Shown piece by piece: positions 1,971-57,445 of a stretch of 64,000 nucleotides of DNA (its first letter is position 1; each line of letters opens with the position of its first letter). The stretch comes from Macrostomum lignano. Taxonomy: Eukaryota. The position numbers were made by a program, and so were the translations under genes. Location of the stretch: the NCBI GenBank assembly GCA_002269645.1, contig NIVC01001066.1, positions 1 through 64,000 on the forward strand, read 5' to 3'. The notes beneath the pieces were generated by a model, which worked only from the letters and a program-made list of their open reading frames with translations, did not search any database and was not told the DNA's origin.

Positions 1971-4900
1971 ATTATTCAATAATTTATCGATAGCTAGGAG
2001 ACAATACTCACTACGGTTAATCGAAATCTAAAAGCCAATGAAATACTCGCTGATGGCTAGATTATTATTATTAAAAGCCGATCCCGCCCTCGCTCGCTCG
2101 CTAGTCGCAGCAAGAGTCACGCTAACTTAAACACCAAGAGCTTACCCTTCTCCATTCCGCACTGACGGACTTGGCCCTGTCTGGCCCCGCATTGCCACTT
2201 CAAATGCAGAGCAATCAATCTTTACCCGGGCCGGCGGGGCGCTGGAGAGAGAGAGAGAGAGAGCTCTCCACTGAGTCCAACTGCCGTGTGCTCGCAGACG
2301 GGAAGGCGGAGAGCGGCAAGCGGAGCAGCGGCGAGGAGGTAGGGAAATCAAATACTCAAGGAAGGAAAAGGGGCCAGAAAAAGGAAACTATGCAGGATGA
2401 ATAGGGGGGGGGGTAGAGTGGGTGGGGGGCAAGGGGGACAAGGGCAAAGAATGAGAACGATAGCTGAAGCGAAGGATGAGGAGGGGTTGGGAGTGGGAGA
2501 ATGGAGAACAGTGCTTTACGACGGCACACTCGATTGTGTGTGTAGGCAAGGAGAGGAACAGGGGAAAAGTTGAGCGGGTTGCGGCCGCTCTGCTTCTTTC
2601 TCCACTTCCTCCACCCTCCGGTCTTAAGCTTAATTCTCATATTTCTCTAGTCAGTCGTGCTCCGCTGCTGTCCACCCCAATGTTAGGCAAACCCTTTCTT
2701 TCTTGCTTGTGAAAGGAACTGGAGAGTGGGAACGACAAACTCTCATTCATATAGGCTATCGGCTCTATCGCATTGGACGCAGAAGATGAACGGTGAAAAA
2801 TTAAGTGTAGAGTTTTTACATAAGAGGGTTAGCAACCAGAAATAATTCCTCTCTAGGCGGATTTTGTGGACAATAGAGAAGGGCAGACAGGAGGGTGGGG
2901 TGCAAGTGTTTGTGCGCACAATGACGGATCGGAGAAAGTTCTACACCCCCTCCCATCCAGCGTCCCATTCTCCCGCCGGCGGCGCTCCCATACTGGTGGG
3001 CATAAAATCGGCTAATTATGCCGAGCTATTTTAGCCTAGTAAAATATAAATCATTGCAAGCGACCGTGGCATTTTTGTAGGCTGCAAAAGCATCGAATGG
3101 AGACCTATGGCAGCCGGCAAAGAACACTTTTCCGTCTTAGTTCGGCCCGCCTTACCCACCTGGCAGCGGTTAGCATCGGTGCCGCATCTGCCAGGCCGTG
3201 GCGGCGGCAGCAACCGGTGAATCAATAAACCCAGAGGACCAAGGATGGGAAGTAGTCAAGATAGGCCCCGGTCCCCAGAGCAATTTTTCGAGGCCTTTGG
3301 TAAAGCAGGAAATTGGGCAGGTAGGGTGGAGGTAAAAAATAGGGGATTAGCTTTTTGGTCGTACGTTGTTTAGACGGAAAAATGGGAGGGAGGCTGGAGG
3401 AATCGCAATCGCAATGCCAGAATTTAACCAAACGCTATCGCGGACGGTGGCACGATTGCGCAGCATAGTATATTTATCCCGGCACCAGCCAGATAGAGCT
3501 GGGAGAGAGGGAGACCGCAAGCAATTACTGCCTGTCATTGCAAAGGGTGCCGCATACATGCACATATATACGAGATACTATATATACATATGAAGCATCG
3601 GATAGATGTTATGGAAAAAGCAGATATAAGTTGGCGGCCTCGGAGCTGAGGAGCGACGGTTCTGGGCCGGGGGAATTGGGAAAGAATTATCGATCACCGG
3701 TTGACACGATACGCCAGGGATGGGACCAAAGAGACAGACTAGACTAGCGAGAGAAAGAGGACTGGATTTGGTTTCGTTCAACTGCGGCCGGTCGGCCTGG
3801 GTGTAATTATTATAATCAGACCCGATGCGGTGGTGAGACTGGCTGAACTCCGCGCGCAGCTCTTGCGAAAGCGGAAGCCCAGAGCTACTGATCAAAACTG
3901 CGCGGCACCCACGAGGGTAGGGAGGCGAGAAGGGGAGACAAAGCAGGAGATGAGCGGAGGACAACGAGGCAACGGAGAGCTGATCCCAGCGCATTTTCCA
4001 CTCAGATGGGCATTCAATTTTAAACCTATGCGCTGGACAGGAAGAAGCGAAGGGAGAGAAAAATGAGAGAGAAGATTGTGTTACAATTTTTCTTGGCGTA
4101 ATTGCCACCCTGCCTTCTCCACAAGCCGTTGCGCTGCATGGCGTGCCTAAAGCCGCTTTAATTTGCGCATGCAGCCCCCGTCAATATGGACACACGGAGC
4201 TTCAGGGACAGACAGTCGAAGCGCAACCACGGTGGGGTGCAAAGGGCTAACTTGGCAACCGAATAATGCTCCCTTCCCTAGTAGATAAAAGGAGAAAGTC
4301 CCGTCTCAGGCCAAGCAGAAAAACTGGGCCTGCGTGATGAAAACAGCAAGTTAAAGCCGAACAAGGAAAGCCAAGGCTGTCGAGCAGCGAAGCGTTCATT
4401 CCTGGGCTCCTTCTATGCTCAATGTTTTATTATTCAAAGTCATGCAGCGTGCTGCCTGAGTAGGAAGGAGTCAAGCCACCTTGACCCCACAGTGGACCTC
4501 CCTGATGTGCCTCCGGATGCATGAATAAAAATGGCTGTGTCGAAAACAGAAGCAAGAGACTGTGGAGAGCTAGCCCCGGCACGAGGACAACGCTGTTCAG
4601 CAAGGCAGAAGACAATAAAATGAATAAAGAAAACTGCTGGTCACCAGACTGGAAACTCTGCGAGGAAAATCCAAAGGGTGGACAGAAAGCCGCGGGGAAC
4701 AATTCGATCCGACATGTCGCTGGGAGGCGCAAGAGAGAGAATGAGAATGCAGAAAGGGAATGATGGAGAGAGAAATGGAGATAAATATAGGGAGACTGGG
4801 GAGTCTGGCCAAAGCTGGGAAGGATTGAATTAAGCGAAATGAGATAATGGGGAAGAGGTCCAGCGGGAGAGACGAGGCAGTGCGCCATATAGTCGCCTGA

Positions 4901-7900
4901 ACGGCGGCATATCAAGCTGCGACACGCTGGGCACCCTTGCTCTCTCGCTCGCTGCTGCCAGAGCCTCTTGTCCAACCGATTTGAATTTCAAATGGACTCT
5001 GATGGAGGAGAAAATTGTCAAGCCAAAAGCCGAAGCTTAGCCGCCGATGCCTACGCCGACTCTCAAGGCCCCTTTGAGCGCCTCACTGGTCCCTTCAGTA
5101 ATCCACTTAAAAAATGCCAACGTTTGGCCGACGACCCTCAAAGCCGGACCAGCCGCCATAAATTTAATAGACAGGGGCAGCGCACCGACACTCAGACAAA
5201 TTGATTTTACTGACCGGCCGTTCGCTTCCATTTCCCTTTCCGCAGCCGCCAAACGCAAACCTTAAAACCGATCCCAGGTTTGCATGGGGGGTCTCACTGG
5301 GAGCTGGCTGCGGATGGAAGATAGGACAGCTAAATGCAAAACGGGAGGCTCCGCTGGGAGCAACTGACACGGGACAGCTGGATAGAGCGGATATCCGTCA
5401 AAGCCAGATAAAGCAAGCGACAGAAACAGGAAATTATAACTAAACTAATGACCCGAAAGTTGACGCGAAGCTTTACATTCATCCGTGCATGATTCAGATT
5501 TATTCACTTACCATGGCCATTAAGGGCAATCGAAATCGCAAGTCCGTGATTGGTAGCGCAAAAGCCGGACAGATTTCTTGATGACGACGCTTCATAACCA
5601 TAACAGGCGGACAATTGGAGCAGAGGCAACTACTGATAACATTCAGCGCAGCGGAAAATTCGATTTTCACCCCCTTACTTTATTTTCTTTACGGTTGCTT
5701 TCTGTTTTTTTTAGCGTCGTCTCGTTGTGCTTTGAGTACAAGGGAGCCTTTCAACACAGCGAGCGGGTCGGCTTGAGCAGATTTAGGACTAAGGCGTAGC
5801 ACACCTAGACGATATATTGACACAAGTGGCGCGTGCAGAAGGAGATTTTTTGAGACCACTGGCTGTTGCCTCGTCACGGATTCGTTCAGCAGATTGGATT
5901 AACTAGGTAGGCAGCGCTGGGAAAGCAACTTCCGCGGCAGTGGATCGGAGAGAGAGGGGAGCTTTCACCCAGTTGCAGAAATCTAGCCTGAATGAATACC
6001 CAAGGACGACGCGCAGCAGATTGCAGGGTAAGCGAATGGTAGCAGCGCGCGGAGCTCTTGGATTTTTCGTTTCAGACTGGGACTGTTGCGCGATCTTTTG
6101 CTGCAATCGCCTCTGAGATTGAATAGCACGGAGCACAAGTTGAAAGTAGAGTGTGCGGCTGCTTCACGCCCGCGCCTCGGAATTTAATAGCAACAGTAAG
6201 ATTCGTTTTTTATGCGAAACTTTCTTATAAAACGATGCTCAGCCTAGCTGCTCGTTTAAATCAGGCGAAATTTAGAAGGTTGCCGTGAAAAACTGACGAA
6301 GTAAAATTCAATTAGCAAGTCTATAGGCCGGCAGTGCAGAACCGTTCCAGGGAGGGGGCAAGGTGCCTTCTATATGTTTAAAAAATAATTGCGCTGATTT
6401 CCAAGCAAGCAAGGGCCGGGCCCAAAAAAGGTATGAACAATGACGAATGGTCTTTCTGCTTTTCGTTGTCTTTGCACGAAAAAATTAGTTGATAATGTTT
6501 GCGCCAGCTAATGTAGGTATATGCGCTTATATTTATACTGCGCAGCGGCTATGTCCAATAGAATTGCTTTCTCTTTCCCTGCAAATCGACGCAGGAGAGA
6601 TTCAAGCTGGCTGTAAAACCGCTGTTGGCGGTCTCTGGACTGCTGGACCAGTGAAAGAGCGGCTCGTTAAGTCAAAGTCGAATTGTAGCCAAGCGATTGT
6701 TGAGAAGCTGCTGACTGGTGCACACAATTGGCGAGGGAAACTAAAGATATAAAACTGAAGGGGAAAATTCTCCTATGTCAGGGACCAAGGCTTCCTCTCC
6801 TCGCCAGCCCGAGGATACGGCAAATATACTCCCCATCTCTTCCCAACTCGTCCTCATCCCAAAGCACAGTCCCGAGGGGGACCAGACCCTATGCCCCCCT
6901 CCCCCATGCCCGACCCAGGAACTGACCAATGATGCGATGCCGTTCAATGAATCGCCCCTCTCGTACTTCCAAAAAAAGATTTCAAACGCGCGCAGAACAG
7001 AGAGCGCCCCCCTCTCTATGTCTCCCCTCTGCCTGCATTGCCACCATCGTGTAGAACCCTCTTGAGGCTAGCCAGCAATGATGGCGCGCTCTGGAGGAGG
7101 GGATGGAGGCAGTGAGTCTTGGGTGGAGACAGGCACCAAGGCTTCGCTGTATTATCTGCGGCCCCCAGCAGCCTCCAAATCCAACAAAGCAAACTTGAAG
7201 CTTGAGTCTGCAGTGGATGGCATGCACATTGTTGTTATTATTCGCCAAGAGAAACGCCCGACCATTGTATGATGATGTTCATTTTAAGCCTATTCACAAA
7301 CAAGCGCAGCATCCCGTCTCCATTACAGAATACAGAGATAATACAGCAAAGCCGAATTCACAGGAGACAAGCGAGTAAATAATAGAGGGGAATATGAATA
7401 TGGAAAATACATACACAGATGCGTCCCTGTTGTTTCAAATAGCTATACTGAAACTGGATACACTCCGGTGCAGGATAGTTAAGGGGCCAACCTCCGGGAG
7501 TTTAGACAGGACCAAGGGCCCACGAGAAATACTAGAAGATGCCAGCTGGCTGAGATAGCGCGGATTAAGAGGCAGAACCGGCCTGCCAGCCCCCATTCCA
7601 TCTGTCGTAATCAGCAGCTCCATTTGACAGTCTAGGGATAGCAGTTAAGTCTTTTTTCTCTCGTCTCAACCATTTCTGGCGCAAAGCTCGGCAATTAGTC
7701 ACAAGCCCTTCTCTGCCTGCCGTCTCTTATCCCCAAAAACTACATGAGCGTCGGTTTCTACTCGGATCCGACCGAATCTATATAACTTATTCGTCTCCCC
7801 CCCCCGCCCGCCAGCCCCGGACAGGCGGCCGCTTATGGCCGCGGGGATTGGCAAAGAAAATTGAGAGACAAGACAAGAATAAGCGCGCCTGAGCATATCC

Positions 7901-8627
7901 CCCGAGCATCCGAAGCTGACTTAGAGCTGGTATTCTCCTTTCCTTCCTTCCAGCCCGAATGCAAATCAGACAGTGATTTAATTCCGCTAAGGCTTTACCC
8001 AGGGCTTATTTGGTCCGGCTTCTTGACTTACTATACTCGTGGGCCGGCCCTCCCGCATTTTGTTGTACGAGCCTAAAACTGCGCCGCATTCTCCGCCTGC
8101 CTGTGTTAGAAATCGGAATGAATCAGGGATCCGACATAAGCTTTTCTTTTTTTTTGCACAGGAGAAATCGTTAACAGAAACTCCCTGTCGGTCAAGCCAG
8201 TTACTAAGTGTAATGGCATACGCTGGAATAGGCCTGCCTACCCAGCAGCTATGAGCAGACGGGAATTGTCGCTCACATTTCCAGCGGTGCAACCAGCCAG
8301 CCAAAATCCATTTGCACGCGAGCTCGGACTCGGGTAAAATCCTCGAAGTTAGATTGGGTCACTGTGCGTGTGTATGGACCCACTGTGCTGCCCTGAAAAA
8401 CTACACCCGCGGCAGGAAAGCTGCGCACAGAGCCATATACTTATTACTCCGGGAGGCTGAGCAGATTCAGATAGCGCACAGATCTGCGCAAACACGACAG
8501 CACTTAGGCAAATTAGTGTCTCTCAATAATATGCTGTATGGGCCCTTCTCTGCTTTGCATGCGAGTGACTGAGTGCAATATACGCCGAGCTTGTGGTCCA
8601 TCGCAGTTCCTACTTCTCTCTCTCCAT

Positions 8628-8697
<70 letters not shown>

Positions 8698-9528
8698 TTC
8701 CAATGCTCAGCAAACTACTGTTTCTAGTCGGATGGGGGGCTCATATTTGAGCTTGAGTTGACTTAGCTAGCAATCGGCCCCAACTTGGCTCACAAATACC
8801 CTCTTCCCTCCCCTCTCCACCGCCAGCCCCAACCGAGGCAAATTTGGCAGGTTAATAAACACGAGGCCTGGCCCTGCAGCAGCGGCGGACTTAATTAAGC
8901 AGCAGCGGATGGCAAAATCACCGGTTTATTACAATAAAGCCAGCAGGAAGGCTAGGTAACTATAGCATGCGTATAAACTGTCAGAAATGGCTCAAGCTCC
9001 CACTGCACAACATCCAATTCTCCATCTCTCAATTCACAAAAAGCATCAACCAGCTACTCCCCACCCGACTTGCCCAGGTCCAATTTCCAGGGGTGCCGCC
9101 CGCCCCGGCTAACTTATTTATCAAATCAATAGTTTTGGTAACTGGTTAGTCTTTCTGTCCCACAGCCGCACAGCTCTTAGTCAGAAACAGCATGCGGTCC
9201 GTCTAACCGTGCTAAAAACGCCTCTCTCGGAAGCTAAATAGGCACTCAGCGCTATCTAGCACTGTGGTCAATGATGGCAGCCCGGCAATCAGTCCTATTG
9301 TTTGCTTCTAAATTGCCCGCCGGGGTTGCCCGCTGCTCGCAATCGGGTGGATTTAGGATTAGGAATTAGCGGATACTGCAATAGCCAAGTCAAATTCTTA
9401 CGTGTGTCAGAAATGTTGTCAAAAGTTACAGTGTGAATTTGGAAAAATATTCTAGATGCGAAACACTGCCAGAGAGAAAATGACAGCAAAACTGTCGTCA
9501 GACTACTAATATCAGCCATAATCAATGA

Positions 9529-9826
9529 CATACATGCGCAACCTCTGAAATTCGGTCGGCCATGCGACTTAGTTTTAACAAAAATGCGACGTAGTTTTTG
9601 GCCAAAAATGCGACTTACATGTAAAAAAACCCTAAAGCAAAATTAACGCAACTTTGGGTAAACGGCAGGAGTAACTATGACTGTCTTATTAAGCCAAAAT
9701 GCCTCGTCAGCTACTTAGTACTACTACTTGATTATTTTTTCGGGTGGGCATTTTTGCGACTTCCTTGGTTGGCCGCCAAATCGGTCGGCCGGATCGGCCG
9801 ACTCGGCCGACTGTTGCGCATGTATG
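9529..9826 (+). mobile_element. MITE (hAT- or P-like, 8-bp TSD) carrying a 28S rRNA fragment, copy 1
   Basis: TIR CATACATGCGCAAC / GTTGCGCATGTATG. TSD ATCAATGA at 9521-9528 and 9827-9834. Internal ATGCGAC and CGGCCGA repeats; 28S-like segment at 9656-9719. Confidence 0.92.
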
Positions 9827-10349
9827 ATCAATGAGAAACAATTTATAGCAAAATCTACGTAGGAAGAAATAAATTGATTGCAGGATTAACCCCCTACTCC
9901 CTCCCCCCGGAAAAACCTTGCCAGATGAATGGCGGCAGGCTTACATAGCCAGCCAGTCATTGAAACCTGGGCTTAGAAAGCCTTGGCGTCCTGGCCGGAT
10001 GCTCAGAATCCCTCAGCAACCCTTTGCCCCAAATTCGCTGCGAATTTTGGCACGCAACGGATATCCTATTGATTGCTGCCAGCTACAGAGCACAATATAC
10101 GCGAGAAAAAACTTTGGCAGAAAGGGAGGGGGTTATAATCCCAATCTAGAGCTGCTTTCATTCTTCTGAGAGCGTTCGCTCACTCACCCGCTAGCGTGCT
10201 CAACTACTCACACTTTTTGACGGAGGCTAAAAAAGAAAAGTTATTTTTTAGATCAAAGTCATAAGGCCCAATTGCTTTCAAAAGAAAATGGATTAGGGTT
10301 GCCCAAGTATGCTGAATCTAATCAGACTCTTACTCATTACAAGCTCTGA

Positions 10350-10950
10350 GATCTGGGAGACTGGCTTAATCTGGGGATCTGGGAGACTGGCTTAATCTGG
10401 AGATCTGGGAGACTGGCTTAATCTGGGGATCTGGGAGACTGGTTTAATCTGAGGATCTGGGAGACTGGCTTAATCTGGGGATCTAGGAGACTGGCTTAAT
10501 CTGGGGATCTGGGTTTGGGAGAGTGGTTTAACGTGAGGTCTGGGCGAGCGGTTTAACCTCAGGTCTGAGAGAGTGGTTTAACCTGAGGTTTGGGAGAGTG
10601 GTTTAACCTCAGGTCTGGGAGAGTGGTTTAACCTCAGGTCTGGGAGAGTGGTTTAACCTCAGGTCTGGGAGAGTGGTTTAACCTCAGGTCTGGGAGAGTG
10701 GTTTAACCTCAGGTCTGGGAGAGTGGTTTAACCTCAGGTCTGGGAGAGTGGTTTAACCTAAGGTCTGGGAGAGTGGTTTAACCTCAGGTCTGGGAGAGTG
10801 GTTTAACCTCAGGTCTAGGAGAGCGGTTTAACCTCAGGTCTAGGAGAGCGGTTTAACCTGAGGTTTGGGACAGTGGTTTAACCTGAGGTCTGGGAGAGTG
10901 TTTTAACCTGAGGTCTGGGAGAGTGGTTTAACCTCAGGTCTGGGAGAGTG
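10350..10950. repeat. Two-variant minisatellite: 26-bp unit, then 25-bp unit (AGGTCTGGGAGAGTGGTTTAACCTC)
   Basis: Direct reading; variants switch at about 10510. Confidence 0.95.
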
Positions 10951-12614
10951 GTTAAAACAGAAGAGCAGTGAAAGAGATTGCTTTACCCGTACATATATAC
11001 TATGCAATTCGTAATTGTATGAGACGAATACTAAATTCCCATTCTGTAAGAGCAAGCGAGATTCGTGCCTTCTACTTAAAGTAGATAGATGGACATGTGA
11101 AAAAATCAAGTGGCACAGCGCTGGTTAAAGCGGAAATGAAATGCGTTTGCAGTATTTGCTGCCTTTTGGAGACAATTTTACCACAAGCGGATGCTGCCGC
11201 GCCAAATGGTTAGCCAGCGTTTATCTGTCAGAGAATTAGCCGCGCAGTTCGAATGAAAAAGAAATTTATTCGCAATATTTGCCAGCCCTATGCACTGGCC
11301 CAGCCAATTAGGAAACACACGAGTTTAATTGCGCACGATTCAGCATTTTATTTTGACAATTTCCCCTTTCAAAAGAGCCGGTTAGAATTTAAAATGTCGG
11401 GAGGTTTTCTGTGTGTCGAGAATCTCATTCGCTTTGCCGCAATGCGCCCAACAAATAGGAAAAAATGCAATGCACAAGCACAGTTGCACAGGAAGTGCGC
11501 AAGCTATGATTTTTTATACTTTAGCTGAGGCTCTCAAAGAGCTCAAATACGCTCGCATATGGCATGCACTATCAAGTGCAATTCGTTTTTATTTTGAGCA
11601 GTTTTGTGAAAACTCTCTCGTCCCCAAATTCCAACAAAATTTTCTCTCATGTATTATCTCATATCTCATGTTATTCGCTACAATCTGGATTTAGCGCTCG
11701 AAAAAACGCGCTCGAATATTCGAGTCAGAGAGCAAAAATGGGGGGTTGGGGGATGGGGAGCAGCGGCTGCTGATGAAGCTAACGGAAAGAAACTGGATAC
11801 TGCCCAGCCATGAGCAATTGCAATTGCAATATAGATTGCGGCAACGGGAAGGGCTGAGAGGAGTTGGGGCAGCGGCCGGGGAGAGCCTCGGGCTTGAGTA
11901 AACTCGAACTGCTAAACTGTAACGAGTAGTCAGAGCTCAGAGCTACTGCTAGGCCGCACTGTATCTAGAATTTATTCTCTGGGACAGCCGGCAGCTGGGC
12001 GGACGCGGAACCGGAGAGGAGGGGGATAAGGGAGAAATGGGATCGCAGGATCACAGAATTTATAATTGGCCGGGCAGGCGAGCAGGGCACGATCCGTATG
12101 GATGGGATCTGGGATTCGAATATAAGAGATGGGAGAGATGAGGCGGGGGAGCTTCTGCAAAACTCGCGAGTGGTGGGAGATATTGGTTATCGCTGGCAAT
12201 TAACCTCTCCAACGGCTGAGGATATATGGGGGAGGGGGGTGGGTGATGTAGCTAGCTATGCATACTCTGGGCCAGCTGGAAAAAGAAGCTGAGAGAGAGA
12301 AACAGACATAGCCCCGTGAGAGTCCAGAGCAGGCGTGAGCATACTGTGAATACTATATGCTACAGACTAGTTGAGTAGATTTGGAAGAATTAAAAATGCA
12401 AGCCTAGTTTTTTCACACCTATATACGCGAGCGCAAACGGACTGACGCTTCTTGATTAAATATTTAGTTTTCAAAAACTGCACGGCCATAAAACATACAG
12501 GGGTGAATCAGTACTGACCAGGTGCAATACCAGCATTGTCATGGATCTTGAGAAATACAGGCAGCGGATCACTCACAAGCTGCGCTTCGAACATTGCGTG
12601 CAATCAAGAATACA

Positions 12615-13155
12615 TGAATTTGCAACCAAAATATCCAAGCTTGCAACTGGAGATTTCAAGTTTGCAACCAAGATATCCAAAGCTTGCAACTGGAGATTTC
12701 GAGTTTTCAACCAAGATATCCAAAGCTTGCAACTGGAGATTTCGAGTTTTCAACCAAGATTTCCAAAGCTTGCAACTGGGAATTTCGAGCTTGCAACTGG
12801 GAATTTCGAGCTTGCAACTGGGAATTTTGAGCTTGCAACTGGGAATTTCGAGCTTGCAACTGGGAATTTTGAGCTTGCAACTGGGAATTTTGAGCTTGCA
12901 ACTGGGAATTTTGAGCTTGCAACTGGGAATTTTGAGCTTGCAACTGGGAATTTCGAGCTTGCAACTGGGAATTTCGAGCTTGCAACTGGGAATTTCGAGC
13001 TTGCAACTGGGAATTTTGTGCTTGCAACTGGGAATTTTGAGCTTGCAACTGGTAATTTCGAGCTTGCAACTGGGAATTTTGAGCTTGCAACTGGGAATTT
13101 CGAGCTTGCAACTGGGAATTTTGAGCTTGCAACTGGAAATTTTGAGCTTGCAACC
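12615..13155. repeat. 21-bp minisatellite (GAGCTTGCAACTGGGAATTT[C/T]), preceded by longer related units
   Basis: Direct reading; explains the multi-frame ORFs. Confidence 0.95.
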
Positions 13156-14610: not shown

Positions 14611-15389
14611 CGGTCCGCTCAAGTTTAGTGTCGCTTTTCAGCTCTTTTCTGTAATCTCCTTTCCTCTCTCTTTTCCTATCTCTTCTCTTTTCTATTCCAT
14701 CTCCTCTCTCCCCTCCTCTGGTCCGCAGTCATGCGCTAGATTCTCCACCTGCCCTGGAGATAAAGATTTTACCAACCCCTGATACAGGGCCAAAGGGCCT
14801 GTAATTCTAACCTTTGGCACCAATTTCTCTTTTGCGTAATTATATATAGCTCTATAATCCTTCGACAGCAAGGGAGATTTCCGTTTAACAAAGACTACTA
14901 GGATGACAGAGAGAGATCTGCGAATTTCTAATTCTATTCCAGACAAAAATCTAAGGAGAAATAATCCTACAGACAAGCACGCGCACGCAAAAGACAATTG
15001 TGTGGGCCAAGCGGGTTGGCAGCAATGAAACAATGAAAATATACTACTATAGAAATAGGGGGGATTATAACTATGACCTGATCCTGTTGTGCTACTACAA
15101 TAGTAGACCAGGAAAGCGACAAGCAACCGGAAATAACATTGGAAAAAGCTAATATCTATACATATACGCAGACTGACTGACTACTAGTAAGGCTTAGATT
15201 AGATTTCCCAGCTGTGCAAGAATTGCTCAAGCAATAACAGAATGCAAGCCAGTAAGACAACAGATCCCCCTCTTCAGCTCAAATCCGCCAATTTTGGTGT
15301 CTAACAGAAACAGAAAAACGGCGACTTAAGGCTGAACTCCTCTAGTATGATTAAAACCCAAAATCTTACTAGGGAAATCCGGTAATAGC

Positions 15390-16495
15390 CTACAGAAACG
15401 CATTTATTTCCCCTGGCCATAAACTACAGAAACGTATTTATTTCCCCTCGCCATAAACTACAGAAACGTATTTGTTTCCCCTCGCCATAAACTACAGAAA
15501 CGTATTTGTTTCCCCTGGCCATAAACTACAGAAACGTATTTGTTTCCCCTGGCCATAAACTACAGAAACGTATTTGTTTCCCCTGGCCATAAACTACAGA
15601 AACGCATTTGTTTGACCTGGCCATAGACTACAGAAATGTATTTGTTTGACCTGGCCATAGACTACAGAAACGCATTTGTTTGACCTGACCATAGACTACA
15701 GAAATGTATTTGTTTGACCTGGCCATAGACTACAGAAACGTATTTGTTTCCCCTGGCCATAAACTACAGAAACGCATTTGTTTGACCTGGCCATAGACTA
15801 CAGAAATGTATTTGTTTGACCTGGCCATAGACTACAGAAACGCATTTGTTTGACCTGACCATAGACTACAGAAATGTATTTGTTTGACCTGGCCATAGAC
15901 TACAGAAACGCATTTGTTTGACCTGACCATAGACTACAGAAGCGCATTTGTTTGACCTGGCCATAAACTACAGAAACGCATTTGTTTGACCTGGCTAAAG
16001 ACTACAGAAATGCATTTGTTTGACCTGGCCATAGACTACAGAAATGTATTTGTTTGACCTGGCCATAGACTACAGAAACGCATTTGTTTGACCTGGCTAT
16101 AGACTACAGAAACGCATTTGTTTGACCTGGTTATAGACTACAGAAGCGCATTTGTTTGACCTGGCCATAAACTACAGAAACGCATTTGTTTGACCTGGCT
16201 AAAGACTACAGAAATGCATTTGTTTGACCTGGCCATAGACTACAGAAATGTATTTGTTTGACCTGGCCATAGACTACAGAAACGCATTTGTTTGACCTGG
16301 CTATAGACTACAGAAACGCATTTGTTTGACCTGGTTATAGACTACAGAAGCGCATTTGTTTGACCTGGCCATAAACTACAGAAATGTATTTGTTTGACCT
16401 GGCCATAGACTACAGAAATGCATTTGTTTGACCTGGCCATAGACTACAGAAACGCATTTGTTTGACCTGACCATAGACTACAGAAACGCATTTGT
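15390..16495. repeat. 34-bp minisatellite (CTACAGAAACGCATTTGTTTGACCTGGCCATAGA), about 32 copies
   Basis: Direct reading. Confidence 0.95.
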
Positions 16496-17871: not shown

Positions 17872-19060
17872 TCTTGGTTGGCGCCCACGTCTCTTGTTGG
17901 CGCTCGTGTCTATTGGCTGGCGCTAGTGTCTTTTGGTTGGCGCCAGTCTCTTGGTGGGCGCCCCTATCTCTTGGTTGGCGCCCCTGTCTCTTGGTTGGCG
18001 CCCCTGTATCTTGGTTGGCGCCCCTGTCTCTTGGTTGGCGCCCCTTTCTCTTGGTTGGCGCCCCTTTCTCTTAGTTGGCGCCCCTGTCTCTTAGTTGGCG
18101 CCCCTGTCTCTTGGTTGGCGCCATTGTCTCTTGGTGGGCGCCCCTTTCTCTTGGTTGGCGCCCCTTTCTCTTAGTTGGCGCCCCTGTCTCTTAGTTGGCG
18201 CCCCTGTCTTTTGGTTGGCGCCAGTCTCTTGGTGGGCGCCCCTATCTCTTGGTTGGCGCCCCTGTCTCTTGGTTGGCGCCCCTGTCTCTTGGTTGGCGCC
18301 CCTTTCTCTTGGTTGGCGCCCCTTTCTCTTAGTTGGCGCCCCTGTCTCTTAGTTGGCGCCCCTGTCTCTTGGTTGGCGCCATTGTCTCTTGGTTGGCGCC
18401 CCTTTCTCTTGGTTGGCGCCCCTGTCTCTTAGTTGGCGCCCCTGTCTCTTAGTTGGCGCCCCTGTCTTTTGGTTGGCGCCAGTCTCTTGGTGGGCGCCCC
18501 TATCTCTTGGTTGGCGCCCCTGTCTCTTGGTTGGCGCCCCTTTCTCTTAGTTGGCGCCCCTGTCTCTTAGTTGGCGCCCCTGTCTCTTGGTTGGCGCCAT
18601 TGTCTCTTGGTGGGCGCCCCTTTCTCTTGGTTGGCGCCCCTTTCTCTTAGTTGGCGCCCCTGTCTCTTAGTTGGCGCCCCTGTCTTTTGGTTGGCGCCAG
18701 TCTCTTGGTGGGCGCCCCTATCTCTTGGTTGGCGCCCCTGTCTCTTGGTTGGCGCCCCTGTCTCTTGGTTGGCGCCATTGTCTCTTGGTTGGCGCCCCTT
18801 TCTCTTAGTTGGCGCCCCTGTCTCTTAGTTGGCGCCCCTGTCTCTTGGTTGGCGCCATTGTCTCTTGGTTGGCGCCCCTTTCTCTTGGTTGGCGCCCCTT
18901 TCTCTTAGTTGGCGCCCCTGTCTCTTAGTTGGCGCCCCTGTCTCTTAGTTGGCGCCCCTGTTTCTTGGTTGGCGCCATTGTCTCTTGGTTGGCGCCCCTG
19001 TCTCTTAGTTAGCGCCCCTGTCTCGTAGTTGGCGCCAATGTCTGTTAGTTGGCGCCTCTA
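17872..19060. repeat. 20-bp minisatellite (TTGGTTGGCGCCCCTGTCTC) with irregular higher-order blocks
   Basis: The marker unit GCCAGTCTCTTGGTGGGCGCCCCTATC recurs near 17942, 18220, 18478 and 18696. Confidence 0.95.
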
Positions 19061-30449: not shown

Positions 30450-31150
30450 TCTCAGACCTCGTATCTATTGGATCTCAAATCTACCGAAACTCATATCTAT
30501 TGGATCTCAAATCTACCGAACCTCAAATCTATTGGATCTCAAATCTACCGAACCTCATATCTATTGGATCTCAAATCTACCGAACCTCATATCTATTGGA
30601 TCTCAAATCTACCGAAACTCATATATATTGGATCACAAATCTACCGAAACTCATATCTATTGGATCTCAAATCTACGGAACCTCATATCTATTGGATCTC
30701 AAATCTACCGAACCTCAAATCTATTGGATCTCAAATCTACCGAACCTCATATCTATTGGATCTCAAATCTACCGAACCTCATATATATTGGATCTCAAAT
30801 CTACCGAACCTCATATCTATTGGATCTCAAATTTACCGAACCTCATATCTATTGGATCTCAAATCTACCGAACCTCATATATATTGGATCTCAAATCTAC
30901 CGAACCTCATATCTATTGGATCTCAAATTTACCGAACCTCATATCTATTGGATTTCAAATCTACCGAACCTCATATCTATTGGATCTCAAATCTACCGAA
31001 CCTCATATCTATTGGATCTCAAATCTACCGAACCTCATATCTAGTGGATCTCAAATCTACCGAACCTCAAATCTATTGGATCTCAAAACTACCGAACCTC
31101 AAATCTATTGGATCTCAAATCTACCGAACCTCATATCTATTGGATCTCAA
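30450..31150. repeat. 32-bp minisatellite (CTATTGGATCTCAAATCTACCGAACCTCATAT), about 22 copies
   Basis: Direct reading. Confidence 0.95.
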
Positions 31151-36590: not shown

Positions 36591-36959
36591 AATTACCACT
36601 GATAAAAACTGTTCACTCTTCTTCTTTGCTGCTAAAAACTTTTCCTTCCGATTTTGTTAATAATAAAAATGATAAAGTTAAATCAATATATCAAGGCTTT
36701 GAATGATTTCTTGCCGCAGTAAATGACAATCAAATTGACTAATTATGAGATGCAGCTAAAAAATAAAAAAAAATTGTCAACTAAAAATGTAAGTACCTGA
36801 GAATAAAAGAATATATATTTCGAATTTGTCTTTAGTCTGTTTATTAATTTAATAAAAATTCTTTGTAAACTGCCGCTGTTGAGTTGGATGACTGGGTCAA
36901 GTTGACGGGCGGCTCTGCTGCATGCATTCGATAAATGGACAACTTTTGAGCAATTGGTG

Positions 36960-37720
36960 GATAAGCTTTGAGCTGCGAGTGGGTAGATTTTAAGCAATTG
37001 GTGGATAAGCTTTGAGCTGCGAGTGAGTAGATTTTGAGCAACTGGCGGATAACCTTTGAGCTGCGAGTGAGTAGATTTTGAGCAACTGGCGGATTACCTT
37101 TGAGCTGCGAGTGAGTAGATTTTGAGCAACTGGCGGATAACCTTTGAGATGCGAGTGAGTAGATTTTGAGCAACTGGCGGATAACCTTTGAGCTGCGAGT
37201 GAGTAGATTTTGAGCAACTGGCGGATAACCTTTGAGCTGCGAGTGAGTAGATTTTGAGCAACTGGCGGATAACCTTTGAGCTGCGAGTGAGTAGATTTTG
37301 AGCAACTGGCGGATAACCTTTGAGCTGCGAGTGAGTAGATTTTGAGCAACTGGCGGATAACCTTTGAGATGCGAGTGAGTAGATTTTGAGCAACTGGCGG
37401 ATAACCTTTGAGCTGCGAGTGAGTAGATTTTGAGCAACTGGTAGACAAGATTTGAGCGTGAATGAGTAGATTTTGAGCAACTGGTAGACAAGATTTGAGC
37501 GTGAATGAGTAGATTTTGAGCAACTGGTAGACAAGATTTGAGCGTGAATGAGTAGATTTTGAGCAACTGGTAGACAAGATTTGAGCGTGAATGAGTAGAT
37601 TTTGAGCAACTGGTAGACAAGATTTGAGCGTGAATGAGTAGATTTTGAGCAACTGGTAGACAAGATTTGAGCGTGAATGAGTACATTTTGAGCAACTGGT
37701 GGAGAGTGAGTAGATTTTGA
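36960..37720. repeat. Two-variant minisatellite: 44-bp unit, then 43-bp unit
   Basis: Direct reading; variants switch at about 37440. Confidence 0.95.
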
Positions 37721-48480: not shown

Positions 48481-49442
48481 CTTTAACTTTCTCTCTTGAT
48501 TCTACCCCAATTGGCAATATACATATAGATAATTAGATAAATAGCATCAAACATTTTTCTTTGTTGCTTAAGTCTCCAATTCTAGAGACTTCAAAGCTTC
48601 CTTTATATTGAAAATGAAAATTTTAAATTTAGCCCTACCATCTTAACCACAATATGCATATGGCAACAAAATTCTGTTGTTCAAATCTGACCCCATGGAC
48701 TTAAAGCTCCCTCTGCATTGAAAATAAAATATTCTTTTTTATATTAGCCCTTACCACCTAACCACAATGTACATGTGGCTTATATTAAAACTCTTGCTTT
48801 TGTCTCCAGATCCATATAAGTCCTTAATAGTTCTCCTTTGAAAGTAGAAACATTTATCTTAACTTTAGCCCTTTCTATCCAATAACAATAAGACATAGCA
48901 TTGATAATCACTATTACTGATGTCCTAAATTCTAAGGACTTAAGAGTTCTTCTCACTTTAAAACTGGCAACAGTTGTTCATCCCTACCCTTATCAAATCA
49001 ATAGCTCCAATGGTCTTTAAGTCTTTTTTGAGTGGTATTACTAGGTAAAGGAACTAGATATAAGAAATATGTTCTTATAACCATATTTGTATCCATATGC
49101 CTTGTCTAAAAACCTGCTATATCTGTAAATACCTATAGCCATGTCTATAGCTATAACAAAACTCAAATTTATAATGTGTAAAAAATATAAAAAGATTGCA
49201 AATCTCTAAAATTTTAGGCTTCATTACTTAAGGGAACTCTTTGCTTGAAACCACAATGGTTATCACCAAAAAGTTTTTTCTTATTACTATAATGAATTGC
49301 TTATTACCAAAATCACTAAAATATCTTGTGATTGTCATTTAACCAATTACAGTCTATATATAACATAGTAGATAATATGTAAATATGCAAAGCAAAGCAT
49401 AATACCTAAGAGTTGATTGAATTATATATAGTCATATGTATA

Positions 49443-49739
49443 CATACATGCGCAACAGTCGGCCGAGTCGGCCGATCCGGCCGACCGATTTGGCGGCCAA
49501 CCAAGGAAGTCGCAAAAATGCCTACCCGAAAAAATAACAAAGTAGTAGTACTAAGTAGCTGACGAGGCATTTTGGCGTTATAAGACAGTCATAGTTACTC
49601 CTGCCGTTTACCCAAAGTTGCGTTAATTTTGTTTTAGGTTTTTTTGCATGTAAGTCGCATTTTTGGCCAAAAACTATGTCGCATTTTTGTTAAAACTAAG
49701 TCGCATGGCCGACCGAATTTCGGAGGTTGCGCATGTATG
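49443..49739 (-). mobile_element. Same 28S-carrying MITE, copy 2 (inverted)
   Basis: Same TIRs. TSD TATGTATA at 49435-49442 and 49740-49747. Near-identical reverse complement of copy 1; 28S-like segment at 49550-49613. Confidence 0.92.
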
Positions 49740-50833
49740 TATGTATATAAAGTTGTATATACTTTATTATATGCACTTTATAGTAGAATATCTAAAAATA
49801 AGTAAACATGTTAGCAAGGCTCTCACTAGCAAGACTAGAAACTCTATTTAGAGGTAAAATAGGGTCTATTACAACTTAAACCATATCTTTTTAGTTATAA
49901 AAATTTTCGTGATGGATAAAATAACCAAATTGGCAGACAAAATGACTATGAAAATAAGTAAACAAAAAAGTTAGCAAATAAAATGGCCACATACCTACTG
50001 TATCAACTTATTTTGGCTTTTTGAATCCTGCTGTCTTTCTAAGCTAAAGGCCATTTAATTAAAGTTTTTTATTTTTAAACTCAATACATTAAGGTGTCTA
50101 TATATAAATATAACATGTACTATTAAGCATATATAGATGCCTAGGCTAGCCTAGGACTTAAGTATAAGGATAAGAAGCTACATTTCTATTCAAGAGGCAA
50201 GTTTACCAAAAATAAAATATAAGAAATAGAAATAGAAGCTATGAGAAATAGATTTTGATAGGAGTCAGAGATAGACCTAATATTTTTCTTTTGATATTAT
50301 TTGCCTTTCTTATATAGCTCTATTGATATAGAGCTTATGTATAAACTTATAGTCTACTTAATAATGAGCCTTCATTAAAGTAGAATAAAATACTTTTATT
50401 ATAGTTGAATATATAGATTATATTTATGGGAAAAGCCTAGCCTAGTCAATATTGTCTCATTTTTATAAATGCTTAGATTATTGTAGAATTATTGCTTTAA
50501 AACTAAGTAGTATTGAAAATAGGAGCATCAAAAACATGCAGTATTTTTTCTTTATATTTCTTTTTCAAATTTGTTTGCCTGTGTTTCATTCTAAGCTAAC
50601 ATATTCAGGGCAATTACTATTGGTTCATATTAGGGTTGCAGATATTTATTGCTCAATAGTGTTCAAAAAAGAATTATAGATATTGTGCTGAAGGTTTGAA
50701 CAAAATCAAAGACAGTTTTAATGCAAATTGTATGTAGTCCATGTACAAGTCAAGTCAGTTTAGCCAGTGTAGAAAAGCAAGTATACCATCAGAGCACTTT
50801 GAGCTTATGCTCTACACCCTTACTCATCAGCTG

Positions 50834-51202
50834 CAGTAGCGAGGTTAGTATATAGGAACTGTATCCATGCTGCAGGCGCAGTCATCAGACTCTGCTTAAT
50901 GAGATTTAAGATGGCATTATTCTATGGCCTGTACTGTCAGTAGCGAGGTTAGTATATAGGAACTGTATCCATGCTGCAGGCGCAGTCATCAGACTCTGCT
51001 TAATGAGATTTAAGATGGCATTATTCTATGGCCTGTACTGTCAGTAGCGAGGTTAGTATATAGGAACTGTATCCATGCTGCAGGCGCAGTCATCAGACTC
51101 TGCTTAATGAGATTTAAGATGGCATTATTCTATGGCCTGTACTGTCAGTAGCGAGGTTAGTATATAGGAACTGTATCCATGCTGCAGGCGCAGTCATCAG
51201 AC
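50834..51202 (+). repeat. 104-bp tandem repeat, about 3.5 copies, running into the ARMT1 5' end
   Basis: Units start at 50834, 50938, 51042 and 51146. Confidence 0.95.
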
Positions 51203-51913: not shown

Positions 51914-52011
51914 GTGAGCTCCGACTGGAAATACTCTGCACACATGGAGTGGAATTTGTCACTAATATATTTACACGGAATTCAAATAGGCATAGCATTC
52001 TGACTCACGCC

Positions 52012-52125
52012 ATCAACCCCTGTGTGAGCGTGTATGAGTGCGTGCCTGTGTACAGTATTGGCGCCCTTGTGTGTAATGTGTTCAGGAGTCAGCGCCGATA
52101 ACTATATCGGCATGTATTACTTCAC
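52012..52125 (+). mobile_element. SINE family A 3' fragment in the ARMT1 intron
   Basis: GTGCCTGTGTACAGTATTGG is shared with about 53966. Confidence 0.5.
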
Positions 52126-52250
52126 TGTCTGTGTTATTATTATGCTCCAGAGTCCCCTCCCCCCAAAATTCCAGGTGTGCGCATTGACGACATTTCTCGT
52201 TCTCTGAGTACGTGTTTGAGCAAGACTGAATGTACAATCATGTCCCGCAG

Positions 52251-54193: not shown

Positions 54194-54796
54194 ATGCCGC
54201 CAAAAGCAGCAAAAAGTAAAACAACCAAGACTGCTGCTGCTACTGCTTCGGCAAAGAAGACCCAGAAACAGCAAAAGGTGTCTGCTGAAGTGGAAGCCGA
54301 CGACTCGCTACCGGGAAAATCGACTCCAGGTAAGAAGCGCCGGCGCACCCTGCCAATCAGACCGGCCCGGCAAGGCGGCCACTGCGTACTGATTTCGCAC
54401 CTGCCGGACGGCCTGCGCGAGCCGCAGCTTCGCCGATTCCTCAGCCAATTCGGCCGGGTTCACCGTGTCCGAGTGCCCCGCTCGAAGTCCGGAGCCGGCA
54501 ACGCCAAAGGCATCGCTTTTGTTGAAATGGCCGAACCAGCAGCTGCCAAGACGGTGGCCGAAACGCTGGATAATTACCTAATGTTCACCCGGCTGCTCAG
54601 ATGCAAGGTGGTGCCGGATCCAAAACGATTGACGTTCGCGTCGGACGGCCGGCTGAAGAAGCAGCCTAAGGCAAAGGAGCAGCCGACTGCCGTTTCTACA
54701 AAAGACTCCGCGGCGGCTGCGCGCGGTCGTTCGCGCCGATTGCGCGCTAAATTGCAAAGATTGAAGCAGTTGGATCCGGAGTTCGAGTTTGCTTAA
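54194..54796 (+). CDS. NIFK: NIFK/MKI67IP (Nop15-like) nucleolar RRM protein, intronless, 200 aa
   Basis: Lys-rich N-terminus, then the RRM VLISHLP...SQFGRVHRVRVPRSK...GNAKGIAFVEM...AKTVAETLDNYLMFTRLLRC, matching the NIFK/Nop15 signature VAETMNNYL. AATAAA near 54856. Confidence 0.88.
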   Translation: MPPKAAKSKTTKTAAATASAKKTQKQQKVSAEVEADDSLPGKSTPGKKRRRTLPIRPARQGGHCVLISHLPDGLREPQLRRFLSQFGRVHRVRVPRSKSGAGNAKGIAFVEMAEPAAAKTVAETLDNYLMFTRLLRCKVVPDPKRLTFASDGRLKKQPKAKEQPTAVSTKDSAAAARGRSRRLRAKLQRLKQLDPEFEFA

Positions 54797-55832: not shown

Positions 55833-55987
55833 TCTGAAAAATAGCCTTATTGATCTGCTATTGATTGAATGAAATAAAATTCAACAATTTTTCTATCTCA
55901 ATTGTTCATAGCAAGTCCGTGCTAGTTTCGAATAAAAAAATGTTTTGATATTAACCAGCTTACCCTGTTAGTGCCGAGATGTTAACA

Positions 55988-57445
55988 CCCCTCAAGATCC
56001 TAGAGTTGGTAGCGTCACCACCCCTCAAGATCCTAGAGTTGGTAGCGTCACCACCCCTCAAGATCCTAGAGTTGGTAGCGTCACCACCCCTCTAGATCCT
56101 AGAGTTGGTAGCGTCACCACCCCTCAAGATCCTAGAGTTGGTAGCGTCACCACCACTCTAGATCATAGAGTTGGTAGCGTCACCACCCCTCTAGATCATA
56201 GAGTTGGAAGCGTCACCACCCCTCTAGATCATAGAGTTGGTAGCGTCACCACCCCTCAAGATCCTAGAGTTGGTAGCGTCACCACCCCTCTAGATCCTAG
56301 AGTTGGTAGCGTCACCACCCCTCAAGATCCTAGAGTTGGTAGCGTCACCACCACTCTAGATCCTAGAGTTGGTAGCGTCACCACCCCTCAAGATCCTAGA
56401 GTTGGTAGCGTCACCACCCCTCAAGATCCTAGAGTTGGTAGCGTCACCACCCCTCTAGATCCTAGAGTTGGAAGCGTCACCACCCCTCAAGATCCTAGAG
56501 TTGGAAGCGTCACCACCCCTCAAGATCCTAGAGTTGGAAGCGTCACCACCCCTCAAGATCCTAGAGTTGGAAGCGTCACCACCCCTCTAGATCCTAGAGT
56601 TGGTAGCGTCACCACCCCTCAAGATCCTAGAGTTGGAAGCGTCACCACCCCTCTAGATCCTAGAGTTGGTAGCGTCACCACCCCTCAAGATCCTAGAGTT
56701 GGTAGCGTCACCACCCCTCTAGATCCTAGAGTTGGTAGCGTCACCACCCCTCAAGATCCTAGAGTTGGTAGCGTCACCACCACTCTAGATCCTAGAGTTG
56801 GTAGCGTCACCACCCCTCAAGATCCTAGAGTTGGTAGCGTCACCACCCCTCAAGATCCTAGAGTTGGTAGCGTCACCACCCCTCAAGATCCTAGAGTTGG
56901 TAGCGTCACCACCCCTCAAGATCCTAGAGTTGGTAGCGTCACCACCCCTCTAGATCCTAGAGTTGGAAGCGTCACCACCCTCAAGATCCTAGAGTTGGAA
57001 GCGTCACCACCCCTCAAGATCCTAGAGTTGGAAGCGTCACCACCCCTCAAGATCCTAGAGTTGGAAGCGTCACCACCCCTCTAGATCCTAGAGTTGGTAG
57101 CGTCACCACCCCTCAAGATCCTAGAGTTGGAAGCGTCACCACCCCTCTAGATCCTAGAGTTGGAAGCGTCACCACCCCTCAAGATCCTAGAGTTGGAAGC
57201 GTCACCACCCCTCAAGATCCTAGAGTTGGAAGCGTCACCACCCCTCAAGATCCTAGAGTTGGAAGCGTCACCACCCCTCAAGATCCTAGAGTTGGAAGCG
57301 TCACCACCCCTCAAGATCCTAGAGTTGGAAGCGTCACCACCCCTCAAGATCCTAGAGTTGGAAGCGTCACCACCCCTCAAGATCCTAGAGTTGGAAGCGT
57401 CACCACCCCTCAAGATCCTAGAGTTGGAAGCGTCACCACCCCTCT
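55988..57445. repeat. 33-bp minisatellite (GATCCTAGAGTTGG[T/A]AGCGTCACCACCCCTC[A/T]A), about 44 copies
   Basis: Direct reading. Confidence 0.95.

What the first reader, a model, noticed from the sequence alone, without database searches (positions are those of the whole stretch)
9529..9826. A mobile MITE family carries the 28S rRNA H69-H71 segment, the R2/Pokey/I-PpoI target site
Seen: a 298-bp element with 14-bp TIRs and a perfect 8-bp TSD (ATCAATGA). A second, near-identical inverted copy at 49443-49739 has its own TSD (TATGTATA), so it transposed as a unit. Bases 9656-9719 align at about 56/65 positions, by hand, to the remembered eukaryotic LSU sequence GGGTAAACGGCGGGAGTAACTATGACTCTCTTAAGGTAGCCAAATGCCTCGTCATCTAATTAGT. 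Known: this stretch is the insertion or cleavage site of R2 retrotransposons, Pokey (TTAA) and the homing endonuclease I-PpoI. Inference: a DNA transposon captured an rDNA parasite landing pad and disperses it. It might act as a decoy or landing site, as an rRNA-mimic small-RNA source, or be a neutral capture. I know of no described MITE with this cargo, but could not search.
Basis: partly seen in the sequence, partly recalled or inferred. Interest (0 to 1): 0.88.

Follow-up and report, generated by a model that had tools for sequence, protein, structure and literature searches.

The report
Flatworm MITE with 28S rRNA fragment
A 298-bp non-coding DNA transposon in the flatworm Macrostomum lignano carries a decayed 64-nt piece of the 28S ribosomal RNA gene in its middle, and that piece looks like passive cargo rather than a working target site, so this is a curiosity of a known kind, not a new mechanism.

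Summary
The window is Macrostomum lignano contig NIVC01001066.1. It holds two copies of a 298-bp element, at 9529-9826 (+) and 49443-49739 (-). Each has perfect 14-nt terminal inverted repeats and its own perfect 8-bp target-site duplication. The copies are 96.6% identical, sit in unrelated flanks and have no coding capacity. A paralogous contig has the empty site of copy 2, with a single 8-mer, so the element transposed.

Bases 9656-9719 match eukaryotic 28S rRNA helices H69-H71 at 56/65 positions (blastn E about 1e-12; Rfam eukaryotic LSU model, 24.7 bits). These two sites are the only rDNA-like sequence in the window.

The "landing pad" reading is not supported. The I-PpoI/Pokey/R2 core is the most degenerate stretch, at 8/15 of the I-PpoI site, and it differs between the copies. 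Two of six H69 stem pairs are broken, and the five substitutions and indels outside the core are shared by both copies.

The best explanation is a 28S fragment acquired as filler DNA by a non-autonomous 8-bp-TSD transposon and carried passively. rDNA-derived modules in transposons are already known (mPok, SINE28, 5S SINEs).

Copy number, the autonomous partner and the superfamily could not be tested, because the rest of the genome was out of reach.

The parts
9521..9528 (.). Left target-site duplication of copy 1 (ATCAATGA)
   Evidence: Identical 8-mer at 9827-9834 directly outside the TIRs.
9529..9542 (+). 5' terminal inverted repeat of copy 1 (CATACATGCGCAAC)
   Evidence: 14/14 complementary to 9813-9826.
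9549..9561 (+). 5' subterminal AATTCGGTCGGCC motif
   Evidence: Repeated at 9778-9790 (family D7). GTCGGCC recurs in inverted orientation near the 3' end. GGTCGGCCG occurs only inside the two copies in the window.
9562..9629 (+). Three tandem 22-24-nt subterminal repeats beginning ATGCGAC(T/G)TA; presumed transposase-binding sites (inference)
   Evidence: family D1. ATGCGACKTA occurs 5 times in the window, all inside the two copies, against 0.14 expected.
9656..9719 (+). 28S rRNA-derived segment (H69-H71 equivalent), sense orientation relative to the copy-1 + strand. A possible decayed extension back to about 9640 is not significant on its own.
   Evidence: 56/65 identity to 28S, E about 3e-12. 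Rfam LSU_rRNA_eukarya 24.7 bits, model positions 2233-2310. 0 of 1000 shuffles reach the score.
9681..9695 (+). Degenerate equivalent of the I-PpoI / Pokey / R2 core (CTGTCTTATTAAGCC, against 28S CTCTCTTAAGGTAGC)
   Evidence: 8/15 ungapped identity. It holds the only two differences between the copies within the 28S-like part. The I-PpoI site string was confirmed in the literature.
9751..9767 (+). Fourth TGCGACTT motif, in the 3' subterminal region
   Evidence: family D3 (9755-9767, 85% to the reference unit).
9778..9811 (+). 3' subterminal cluster of GTCGGCC / CGGCCGAC motifs
   Evidence: D7, I2, I8, I9. 100% identical between the two copies.
9813..9826 (-). 3' terminal inverted repeat of copy 1
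9827..9834 (.). Right target-site duplication of copy 1 (ATCAATGA)
49435..49442 (.). Target-site duplication of copy 2 (TATGTATA), low-coordinate side
   Evidence: The paralogous contig carries a single TGTGTATA here.
49443..49739 (-). Copy 2 of the element (297 bp, inverted); its 28S-like segment is at 49550-49613
   Evidence: 96.6% identical to copy 1. 28S hit with E about 1e-12. TIRs at 49443-49456 and 49726-49739.
49740..49747 (.). Target-site duplication of copy 2 (TATGTATA), high-coordinate side

Best explanation
This is a miniature, non-autonomous class II (cut-and-paste) DNA transposon of Macrostomum lignano. A transposase encoded elsewhere mobilises it in trans. That enzyme presumably recognises the 14-nt TIRs and the subterminal ATGCGAC and GTCGGCC repeats, and it makes 8-bp staggered target cuts.

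The central 64 nt, possibly up to about 80 nt, are a fragment of the host 28S rRNA gene or of an rDNA pseudogene. It was most likely copied in as filler DNA when gap repair of an internally deleted ancestor switched template to the abundant rDNA. It has since been carried along passively and has decayed.

**Shown:** the element's structure, two independent insertions, one empty site, the 28S origin of the segment, and the decay of its functional core.

**Inferred:** the capture mechanism, trans-mobilisation, the binding role of the subterminal repeats, and the neutrality of the cargo.
For: - **Transposon anatomy and mobility.** Perfect TIRs and two different perfect 8-bp TSDs. The flanks of copy 2 align to paralogous contig NIVC01003721.1 on both sides, abutting at a single TGTGTATA with no footprint. 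The copies are 96.6% identical, while those flanks are only 85-89% identical between paralogues. Copy 2 therefore inserted after the regions diverged.
- **Non-autonomous.** Stops occur in all six frames. The longest open stretch has no protein relatives.
- **Cis motifs.** They are confined to the ends and are unique to the copies within the window. The last 80 nt are identical between copies.
- **28S origin.**. Only element positions about 105-191 match any rDNA.
- **Passenger status.**
  - The segment is central, between end-specific sequences.
  - Both copies share five changes at positions that Rfam shows as highly conserved (9667 G>A, 9683 C>G, an extra A at 9696-9699, 9710 T>G, 9714 A>C).
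  - Two of six H69 pairs are broken without compensation.
  - The endonuclease and retrotransposon target core is the most degenerate stretch and varies between copies.
- **Precedent.** A review attributes rDNA modules in non-autonomous TEs to modular reshuffling and speculates that most bring the TE no benefit (PMC10946416).
Against: - Only two copies were seen, so purifying selection on the cargo cannot be measured.
The comparison uses the pan-eukaryotic sequence, so a few of the 'changes' could in principle be host-specific.
- Three of the five shared changes make the segment more like the element's own subterminal repeat (D2 and D4). That could hint at a cis role and not pure drift.
- The R2-protein contact regions flanking the core are fairly well preserved, with 2 mismatches in 33 nt upstream, and the net spacing is unchanged. 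Binding by an R2 protein is therefore not excluded.
Confidence: 0.8

Rival explanations
1. Functional landing pad or decoy. The dispersed 28S-like segment is recognised by rDNA-specific parasites (R2-type retrotransposons, Pokey-like piggyBac elements, His-Cys box homing endonucleases). It either diverts them from the rDNA or gives them sites outside it.
For: - The segment corresponds exactly to the region these elements target.
- The sequence on either side of the core is 90% or more preserved, and the net spacing is unchanged.
- R2 elements exist in Platyhelminthes (PMC12247875).
Against: - The core is the most degenerate part, at 8/15 of the I-PpoI site.
- The R2 nick-site context AAGGTAGCCAAATG is changed to ATTAAGCCAAAATG.
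- The two copies differ there, and TTAA is lost in copy 2.
- No insertion sits in either copy.
- No R2 has been reported for Macrostomum in the papers I read.
Confidence: 0.03
2. Exapted cis element or RNA source. The 28S piece is kept because it helps the MITE, for example as an extra transposase-binding-like repeat. Alternatively it helps the host or the element as a small-RNA or rRNA-mimic source.
For: - The 3' part of the segment resembles the subterminal repeat unit (D2 at 74%, D4 at 90%).
- Three of the five shared changes move it towards that unit. My post hoc estimate of chance is about 0.01 for the two substitutions at 9710 and 9714.
Against:
- The repeat-like halves are split by 8-10 extra nt.
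- The rRNA secondary structure is not maintained.
- Upstream and downstream of the core, similarity to 28S is no better than in shuffles.
- No expression data are available.
Confidence: 0.07
3. The 28S resemblance is coincidental, or the two copies arise from segmental duplication or an assembly artefact and not from transposition.
For: - Rfam scores the segment below the family's gathering threshold (24.7 against 50 bits, and no hit).
- The assembly is known to be redundant (PMC5730564).
Against: - blastn E about 1e-12, and 0 of 1000 shuffles reach the score.
- The match is collinear with model positions 2233-2310 of the eukaryotic LSU model.
- The copies have different flanks and different TSDs, lie in opposite orientation, and one has an empty site.
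Confidence: 0.01

Closest known systems
mPok / Pokey (Daphnia piggyBac transposon and its MITEs)
   Same: A DNA transposon/MITE family whose internal region contains rDNA-derived sequence (PMC10946416, Table 2). It is connected to the same 28S region.
   Different: - Pokey carries IGS-derived 200-bp repeats, not 28S coding sequence.
- It inserts into the 28S TTAA with TTAA TSDs.
- The element here has 8-bp TSDs at AT-rich, non-rDNA sites and unrelated ends.
SINE28 (mammalian 28S-derived SINE, Longo et al. 2015, as cited in PMC10946416)
   Same: A mobile non-autonomous element that contains 28S rDNA fragments.
   Different: SINE28 is a retrotransposon mobilised through RNA. The element here is a TIR/TSD cut-and-paste element, and the 28S piece makes up only about a fifth of it.
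Transduplicating DNA transposons (Pack-MULEs and other elements with captured host fragments or filler DNA)
   Same: A host gene fragment sits between intact transposon ends and is amplified with the element. The fragment is generally decaying and non-functional.
   Different: - The cargo here is rRNA gene sequence, not protein-coding exons.
- The carrier's superfamily is unresolved: its 8-bp TSD differs from the 9-10 bp of Mutator.
- The capture mechanism is inferred, not shown.
5S-rDNA-derived SINEs (SINE3, etc.) and Cassandra/Ajax TRIMs
   Same: Non-autonomous TEs with an rDNA-derived module.
   Different: In those elements the 5S module supplies a Pol III promoter and is functionally conserved. 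Here the 28S piece has no known promoter role and is decayed.
Dispersed rRNA pseudogene fragments (for example the LSU-rRNA hits of RepeatMasker; Robicheau et al. 2017, as cited in PMC10946416)
   Same: Short decayed 28S fragments outside the rDNA arrays.
   Different: Here the fragment is embedded in, and moved by, a TIR element. It did not arrive by itself.

Membership tests
MITE (non-autonomous class II TIR element) | Terminal inverted repeats | tested here: met
   14/14 nt in both copies.
MITE (non-autonomous class II TIR element) | Target-site duplication of fixed length flanking each copy, and an empty site | tested here: met
   8 bp in 2 of 2 copies. The empty site on L004 has a single 8-mer.
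MITE (non-autonomous class II TIR element) | Small size and no coding capacity | tested here: met
   297-298 bp, with stops in all frames and no protein relatives.
MITE (non-autonomous class II TIR element) | Moderate to high copy number, homogeneous family | tested here: inconclusive
   Two copies in about 81 kb of accessible M. lignano DNA. The rest of the genome could not be searched.
hAT superfamily | 8-bp TSD | tested here: met
hAT superfamily | TIR beginning YARNG and target preference nTnnnnAn (from general knowledge of the superfamily) | tested here: not met
   The TIR begins CATAC. The TSDs ATCAATGA and TATGTATA do not fit nTnnnnAn on either strand. With only two sites, this is weak evidence.
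hAT or P superfamily | Autonomous partner encoding the matching transposase with the same ends | not testable with these tools
   The window has no transposase ORF. TE proteins were excluded from the deposited annotation (PMC5730564; one search found no M. lignano hits).
P superfamily | 8-bp TSD, TIR beginning CA, and subterminal repeats (from general knowledge) | tested here: inconclusive
   The 8-bp TSD, the CATA... terminus and the subterminal repeats are compatible but not diagnostic.
Eukaryotic LSU rRNA gene (Rfam RF02543) | Score at or above the gathering threshold and conserved helices | tested here: not met
   24.7 bits against a threshold of 50, covering only model positions 2233-2310 of 3401. 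Two of six H69 pairs are broken. It is a fragment, not a gene.
I-PpoI recognition site | CTCTCTTAAGGTAGC | tested here: not met
   Copy 1 has CTGTCTTATTAAGCC and copy 2 has CTGTCTTATAACGCC, each 8/15 ungapped.
R2 target site | Intact 28S sequence around the nick site ...TTAAGGTAGC|CAAATGCC... (site position from general knowledge) | tested here: not met
   The site reads ...TTATTAAGCCAAAATGCC... in copy 1 and ...TTATAACGCCAAAATGCC... in copy 2. The flanking contact regions are largely preserved, so protein binding was not tested.
Pokey target (TTAA within the 28S core) | TTAA in the TCTTAAGG context | tested here: inconclusive
   Copy 1 has a TTAA in an altered context. Copy 2 has none.

The most novel reading that the evidence does not exclude
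The family is abundant in M. lignano, and its 28S-like module is not inert. Some copies may serve as extra-rDNA entry sites for R2-type elements. Alternatively, the module may have been remodelled into an additional transposase-binding repeat or a small-RNA source. Either would make this the first DNA transposon known to exploit a piece of the 28S gene.
Probability: 0.05. Interest if true: 0.7.

Novelty: new member of a known kind. Interest (0 to 1): 0.3.

Why it matters
This is a clean, well-delimited case of a cut-and-paste transposon picking up and spreading part of one of the most conserved sequences in eukaryotes. It has three practical consequences:

- Such copies will appear as scattered "LSU-rRNA" hits in repeat annotation, rDNA surveys and rRNA-depletion or FISH probe design for this model flatworm.
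- The element adds a DNA-transposon/28S entry to the catalogue of rDNA-derived TE modules. So far that catalogue lists 5S SINEs, Cassandra, SINE28 and Pokey-IGS.
- The insertion is polymorphic between paralogous regions, so it is a usable marker for dating TE activity relative to the genome duplication in M. lignano.

It does not at present open a new mechanism.

Tried and rejected
1. **More copies through proteins.** A 67-aa stop-free translation of the element found nothing in the 5.8-billion-protein collection.
2. **More copies through DNA.** Exact end and cargo patterns found nothing in JGI metagenomes or IMG/VR.
3. **Sampling more M. lignano DNA.**
   - Look-ups of the window's RRM, LSM and neuropeptide-like genes returned only this contig and one paralogous contig.
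   - A Penelope-type ORF from the paralogue had no M. lignano relatives in the collection. TE genes were removed from the deposited annotation.
   - The RRM protein has no further paralogues.
   - A guessed ORF was not on record.
4. **Extension of the 28S homology.** A local alignment ran upstream over the subterminal repeats, but its score equals the shuffle mean, and downstream also shows nothing. I rejected both. Only about 16 nt immediately upstream (9640-9655) may be homologous.
5. **A third TIR-like site.** The site at 10298-10311 has 2 mismatches and lacks all subterminal motifs, so it is a chance match.
6. **Other Rfam hits.** MicC, sroD and the others over the element have E about 1 and are noise.
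7. **Single-strand fold.** It shows only TIR and GGCCGAC pairing and nothing specific to the cargo.
8. **Genes near copy 1.** A Pfam scan of ORFs in 1-44 kb found no usable gene for fetching the paralogous site of copy 1.

Full report
**Source.** A 200-aa RRM protein encoded at 54194-54796 is found, at the same coordinates, on contig NIVC01001066.1 of assembly GCA_002269645.1. That assembly is the Mlig_3_7 assembly of the free-living flatworm Macrostomum lignano (PMC5730564). The window is the first 64 kb of that contig. The same protein is also encoded on a second contig, NIVC01003721.1, which is a paralogous (duplicated-genome) copy of the region.

**The observation.**
- Copy 1 spans 9529-9826. 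It starts with CATACATGCGCAAC and ends with its exact reverse complement. It is flanked by ATCAATGA on both sides, at 9521-9528 and 9827-9834.
- Copy 2 lies inverted at 49443-49739, with the same termini, and is flanked by TATGTATA on both sides.
- The two copies are 96.6% identical: 9 substitutions and one 1-nt indel, and the last 80 nt are identical. The sequences outside the TSDs are unrelated.
- The exact TIR occurs nowhere else in the window. The one 2-mismatch hit at 10298 lacks every internal motif and is chance.
- All six frames contain stops, and the longest open stretch has no relatives among 5.8 billion proteins.

**Proof of mobility.** The flanks of copy 2 align to the paralogous contig (locus L004). 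Window 49152-49442 matches L004 5409-5714, and window 49742-51000 matches L004 5709-6976. The two alignments therefore abut. At the junction L004 reads AGTCA-TGTGTATA-TAAG, a single 8-mer where the window has the 8-mer, the element, and the 8-mer again. This is an unoccupied site with no excision footprint. The flanks are 85-89% identical between the paralogues, while the two element copies are 96.6% identical. Copy 2 therefore most likely inserted after the two regions diverged (inference).

**Anatomy.** Inside the 5' TIR lies AATTCGGTCGGCC (9549-9561). Three tandem 22-24-nt units follow, each starting ATGCGAC(T/G)TA (9562-9629). A fourth TGCGACTT motif lies at 9755-9767. A cluster of GTCGGCC/CGGCCGAC motifs at 9778-9811 sits against the 3' TIR. 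ATGCGACKTA and GGTCGGCCG occur in the window only inside the two copies, against 0.14-0.15 expected. Subterminal short repeats of this type are where transposases of several TIR superfamilies bind. That role is an inference here.

**The 28S segment.**
- blastn of 881-nt 28S stretches from 67 of those contigs against the window hits only the two copies: 86.2% over 65 columns (9656-9719), E = 3e-12, or 80% over 81 columns from 9640, E = 4e-13.
- Searching all 771 kb of those rDNA contigs against the window again hits only these two places.
- Conversely, only element positions about 105-191 match anything in those contigs.
- The core scores 45 in local alignment, against a shuffle mean of 8.0 (sd 1.6), with 0 of 1000 shuffles reaching it. 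The parts of the element upstream and downstream of the core score no better than shuffles.
- Rfam's LSU_rRNA_eukarya model aligns 9645-9721 to positions 2233-2310 with 24.7 bits and E = 1.1e-4. This covers the H69 hairpin and the H71 hairpin in the structure line. The score is below the gathering threshold, and the window has no rRNA gene.
- The match carries eukaryote-specific bases, so it comes from cytoplasmic 28S and not from organellar or bacterial rRNA. That comparison with 23S is from memory.

**State of the cargo.**
- Against the 28S consensus, both copies share G>A at 9667, C>G at 9683, an extra A in the 9696-9699 run, T>G at 9710 and A>C at 9714. These changes therefore predate the split of the copies.
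- 9667 and 9683 lie on opposite strands of the H69 stem but in different pairs. Two of six pairs are broken without compensation (NC line).
28S CTCTCTTAAGGTAGC, the I-PpoI site (confirmed), reads CTGTCTTATTAAGCC in copy 1 and CTGTCTTATAACGCC in copy 2, each 8/15 ungapped.
- The only two differences between the copies inside the 28S-like part fall in that core, and they remove the TTAA in copy 2.
- The sequence is therefore not held as an rRNA, as an I-PpoI site, as a Pokey TTAA context or as an R2 nick site.
- The flanking 28S stretches that R2 proteins contact are fairly well kept, and the net spacing is unchanged. Binding cannot be excluded from sequence alone.

**Most likely mechanism.** This is a non-autonomous cut-and-paste element mobilised in trans. 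A short rDNA stretch filled its internal region during formation or repair of a deletion derivative, through template switching in gap repair. rDNA is among the most abundant nuclear templates. The cargo has since been amplified and has drifted with the element. The central position of the cargo, between end-specific sequences, fits filler DNA better than read-through from an rDNA insertion site. All of this is inference. A 2024 review comes to the same general view for rDNA modules in non-autonomous TEs ("modular reshuffling") and speculates that most do not benefit the TE (PMC10946416).

**Comparison with known systems.** That review's table of rDNA-derived TE sequences lists Pokey/mPok (IGS repeats, piggyBac), many 5S-derived SINEs, Cassandra/Ajax TRIMs and the 28S-derived SINE28. 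It lists no DNA transposon with 28S coding sequence. The published M. lignano repeat annotation discarded unclassified and short models, so this family is probably undescribed. Dfam and Repbase could not be queried.

The superfamily is unresolved. The 8-bp TSD fits hAT or P. The terminus CATAC and the two target sites do not fit the usual hAT patterns (from general knowledge, two sites only). No transposase is in reach.

**Limits.**
- I could read only about 81 kb of M. lignano DNA: the window, 6 kb beyond it, and 11 kb of the paralogue. It contains exactly the two copies.
- Copy number, the family consensus, the autonomous partner, the host's own 28S sequence, small RNAs and any R2 insertions in copies remain untested.
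- Three of the five shared changes make 9696-9719 more similar to the element's own subterminal repeat (D2 and D4). This is post hoc and may be coincidence, but it is the one hint that the cargo might not be fully inert.

**Verdict.** The feature is real and was correctly described. The capture-and-dispersal reading is supported. The landing-pad, decoy and rRNA-mimic readings are not. It is a new example of a known phenomenon and of modest interest.

Noticed in passing
window 59316-59906 (-): An annotated 196-aa product has a signal-peptide-like start followed by 15 tandem 30-nt units encoding ...KR-AYGSMPWG-KR... It looks like a multi-copy neuropeptide precursor that would yield AYGSMPW-amide. 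It has no Pfam family, and only this contig carries it.
   Followed up: partly
window, e.g. 10512-10953, 12638-13154, 15385-16495, 17872-19056, 30456-31150, 36944-37703, 55986-57444: About 17 separate minisatellite arrays (periods 16-44 nt, up to 60 copies) lie in 64 kb. This fits the reported 15% simple and tandem repeat content of this genome, and it explains most of the long 'ORFs'.
   Followed up: partly
window 50834-51202: A 104-nt unit is repeated 3.5 times at 100% identity. It includes the ATG and first codons of the ARMT1-like gene, whose CDS is called from 51188. This is either a very recent tandem duplication of the gene start or an assembly artefact.
   Followed up: no
L004 (NIVC01003721.1:138792-149677) 6947-8624: The paralogous ARMT1-like gene is split into four ORFs and is not called as a gene there. 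The window copy is intact, with two exons and a single 337-nt intron at 51914-52250 by my reconstruction. The paralogue is a possible pseudogene, or the split reflects indel errors in the assembly.
   Followed up: partly
L004 1637-2350 (+) and 4552-4896 (-): A 237-aa ORF with a GIY-YIG-type motif lies at 1637-2350; its best relatives are 37-46% identical, and one has Pfam PF01541. That is the kind of ORF found in Penelope-like elements. A mariner-type transposase fragment lies at 4552-4896. Both sit in stretches of the paralogous contig that have no counterpart in the window, so they are insertion differences between the paralogues.
   Followed up: partly
window 9696-9719 versus 9562-9629: The 3' part of the 28S-like piece resembles the element's own subterminal repeat unit. 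Three of its five shared departures from 28S increase that resemblance.
   Followed up: partly
window 51188 and 55575: The deposited CDS calls for the ARMT1-like and LSM genes begin at non-ATG codons a few codons away from an in-frame ATG. They are 5'-partial ORF calls in the public annotation.
   Followed up: no
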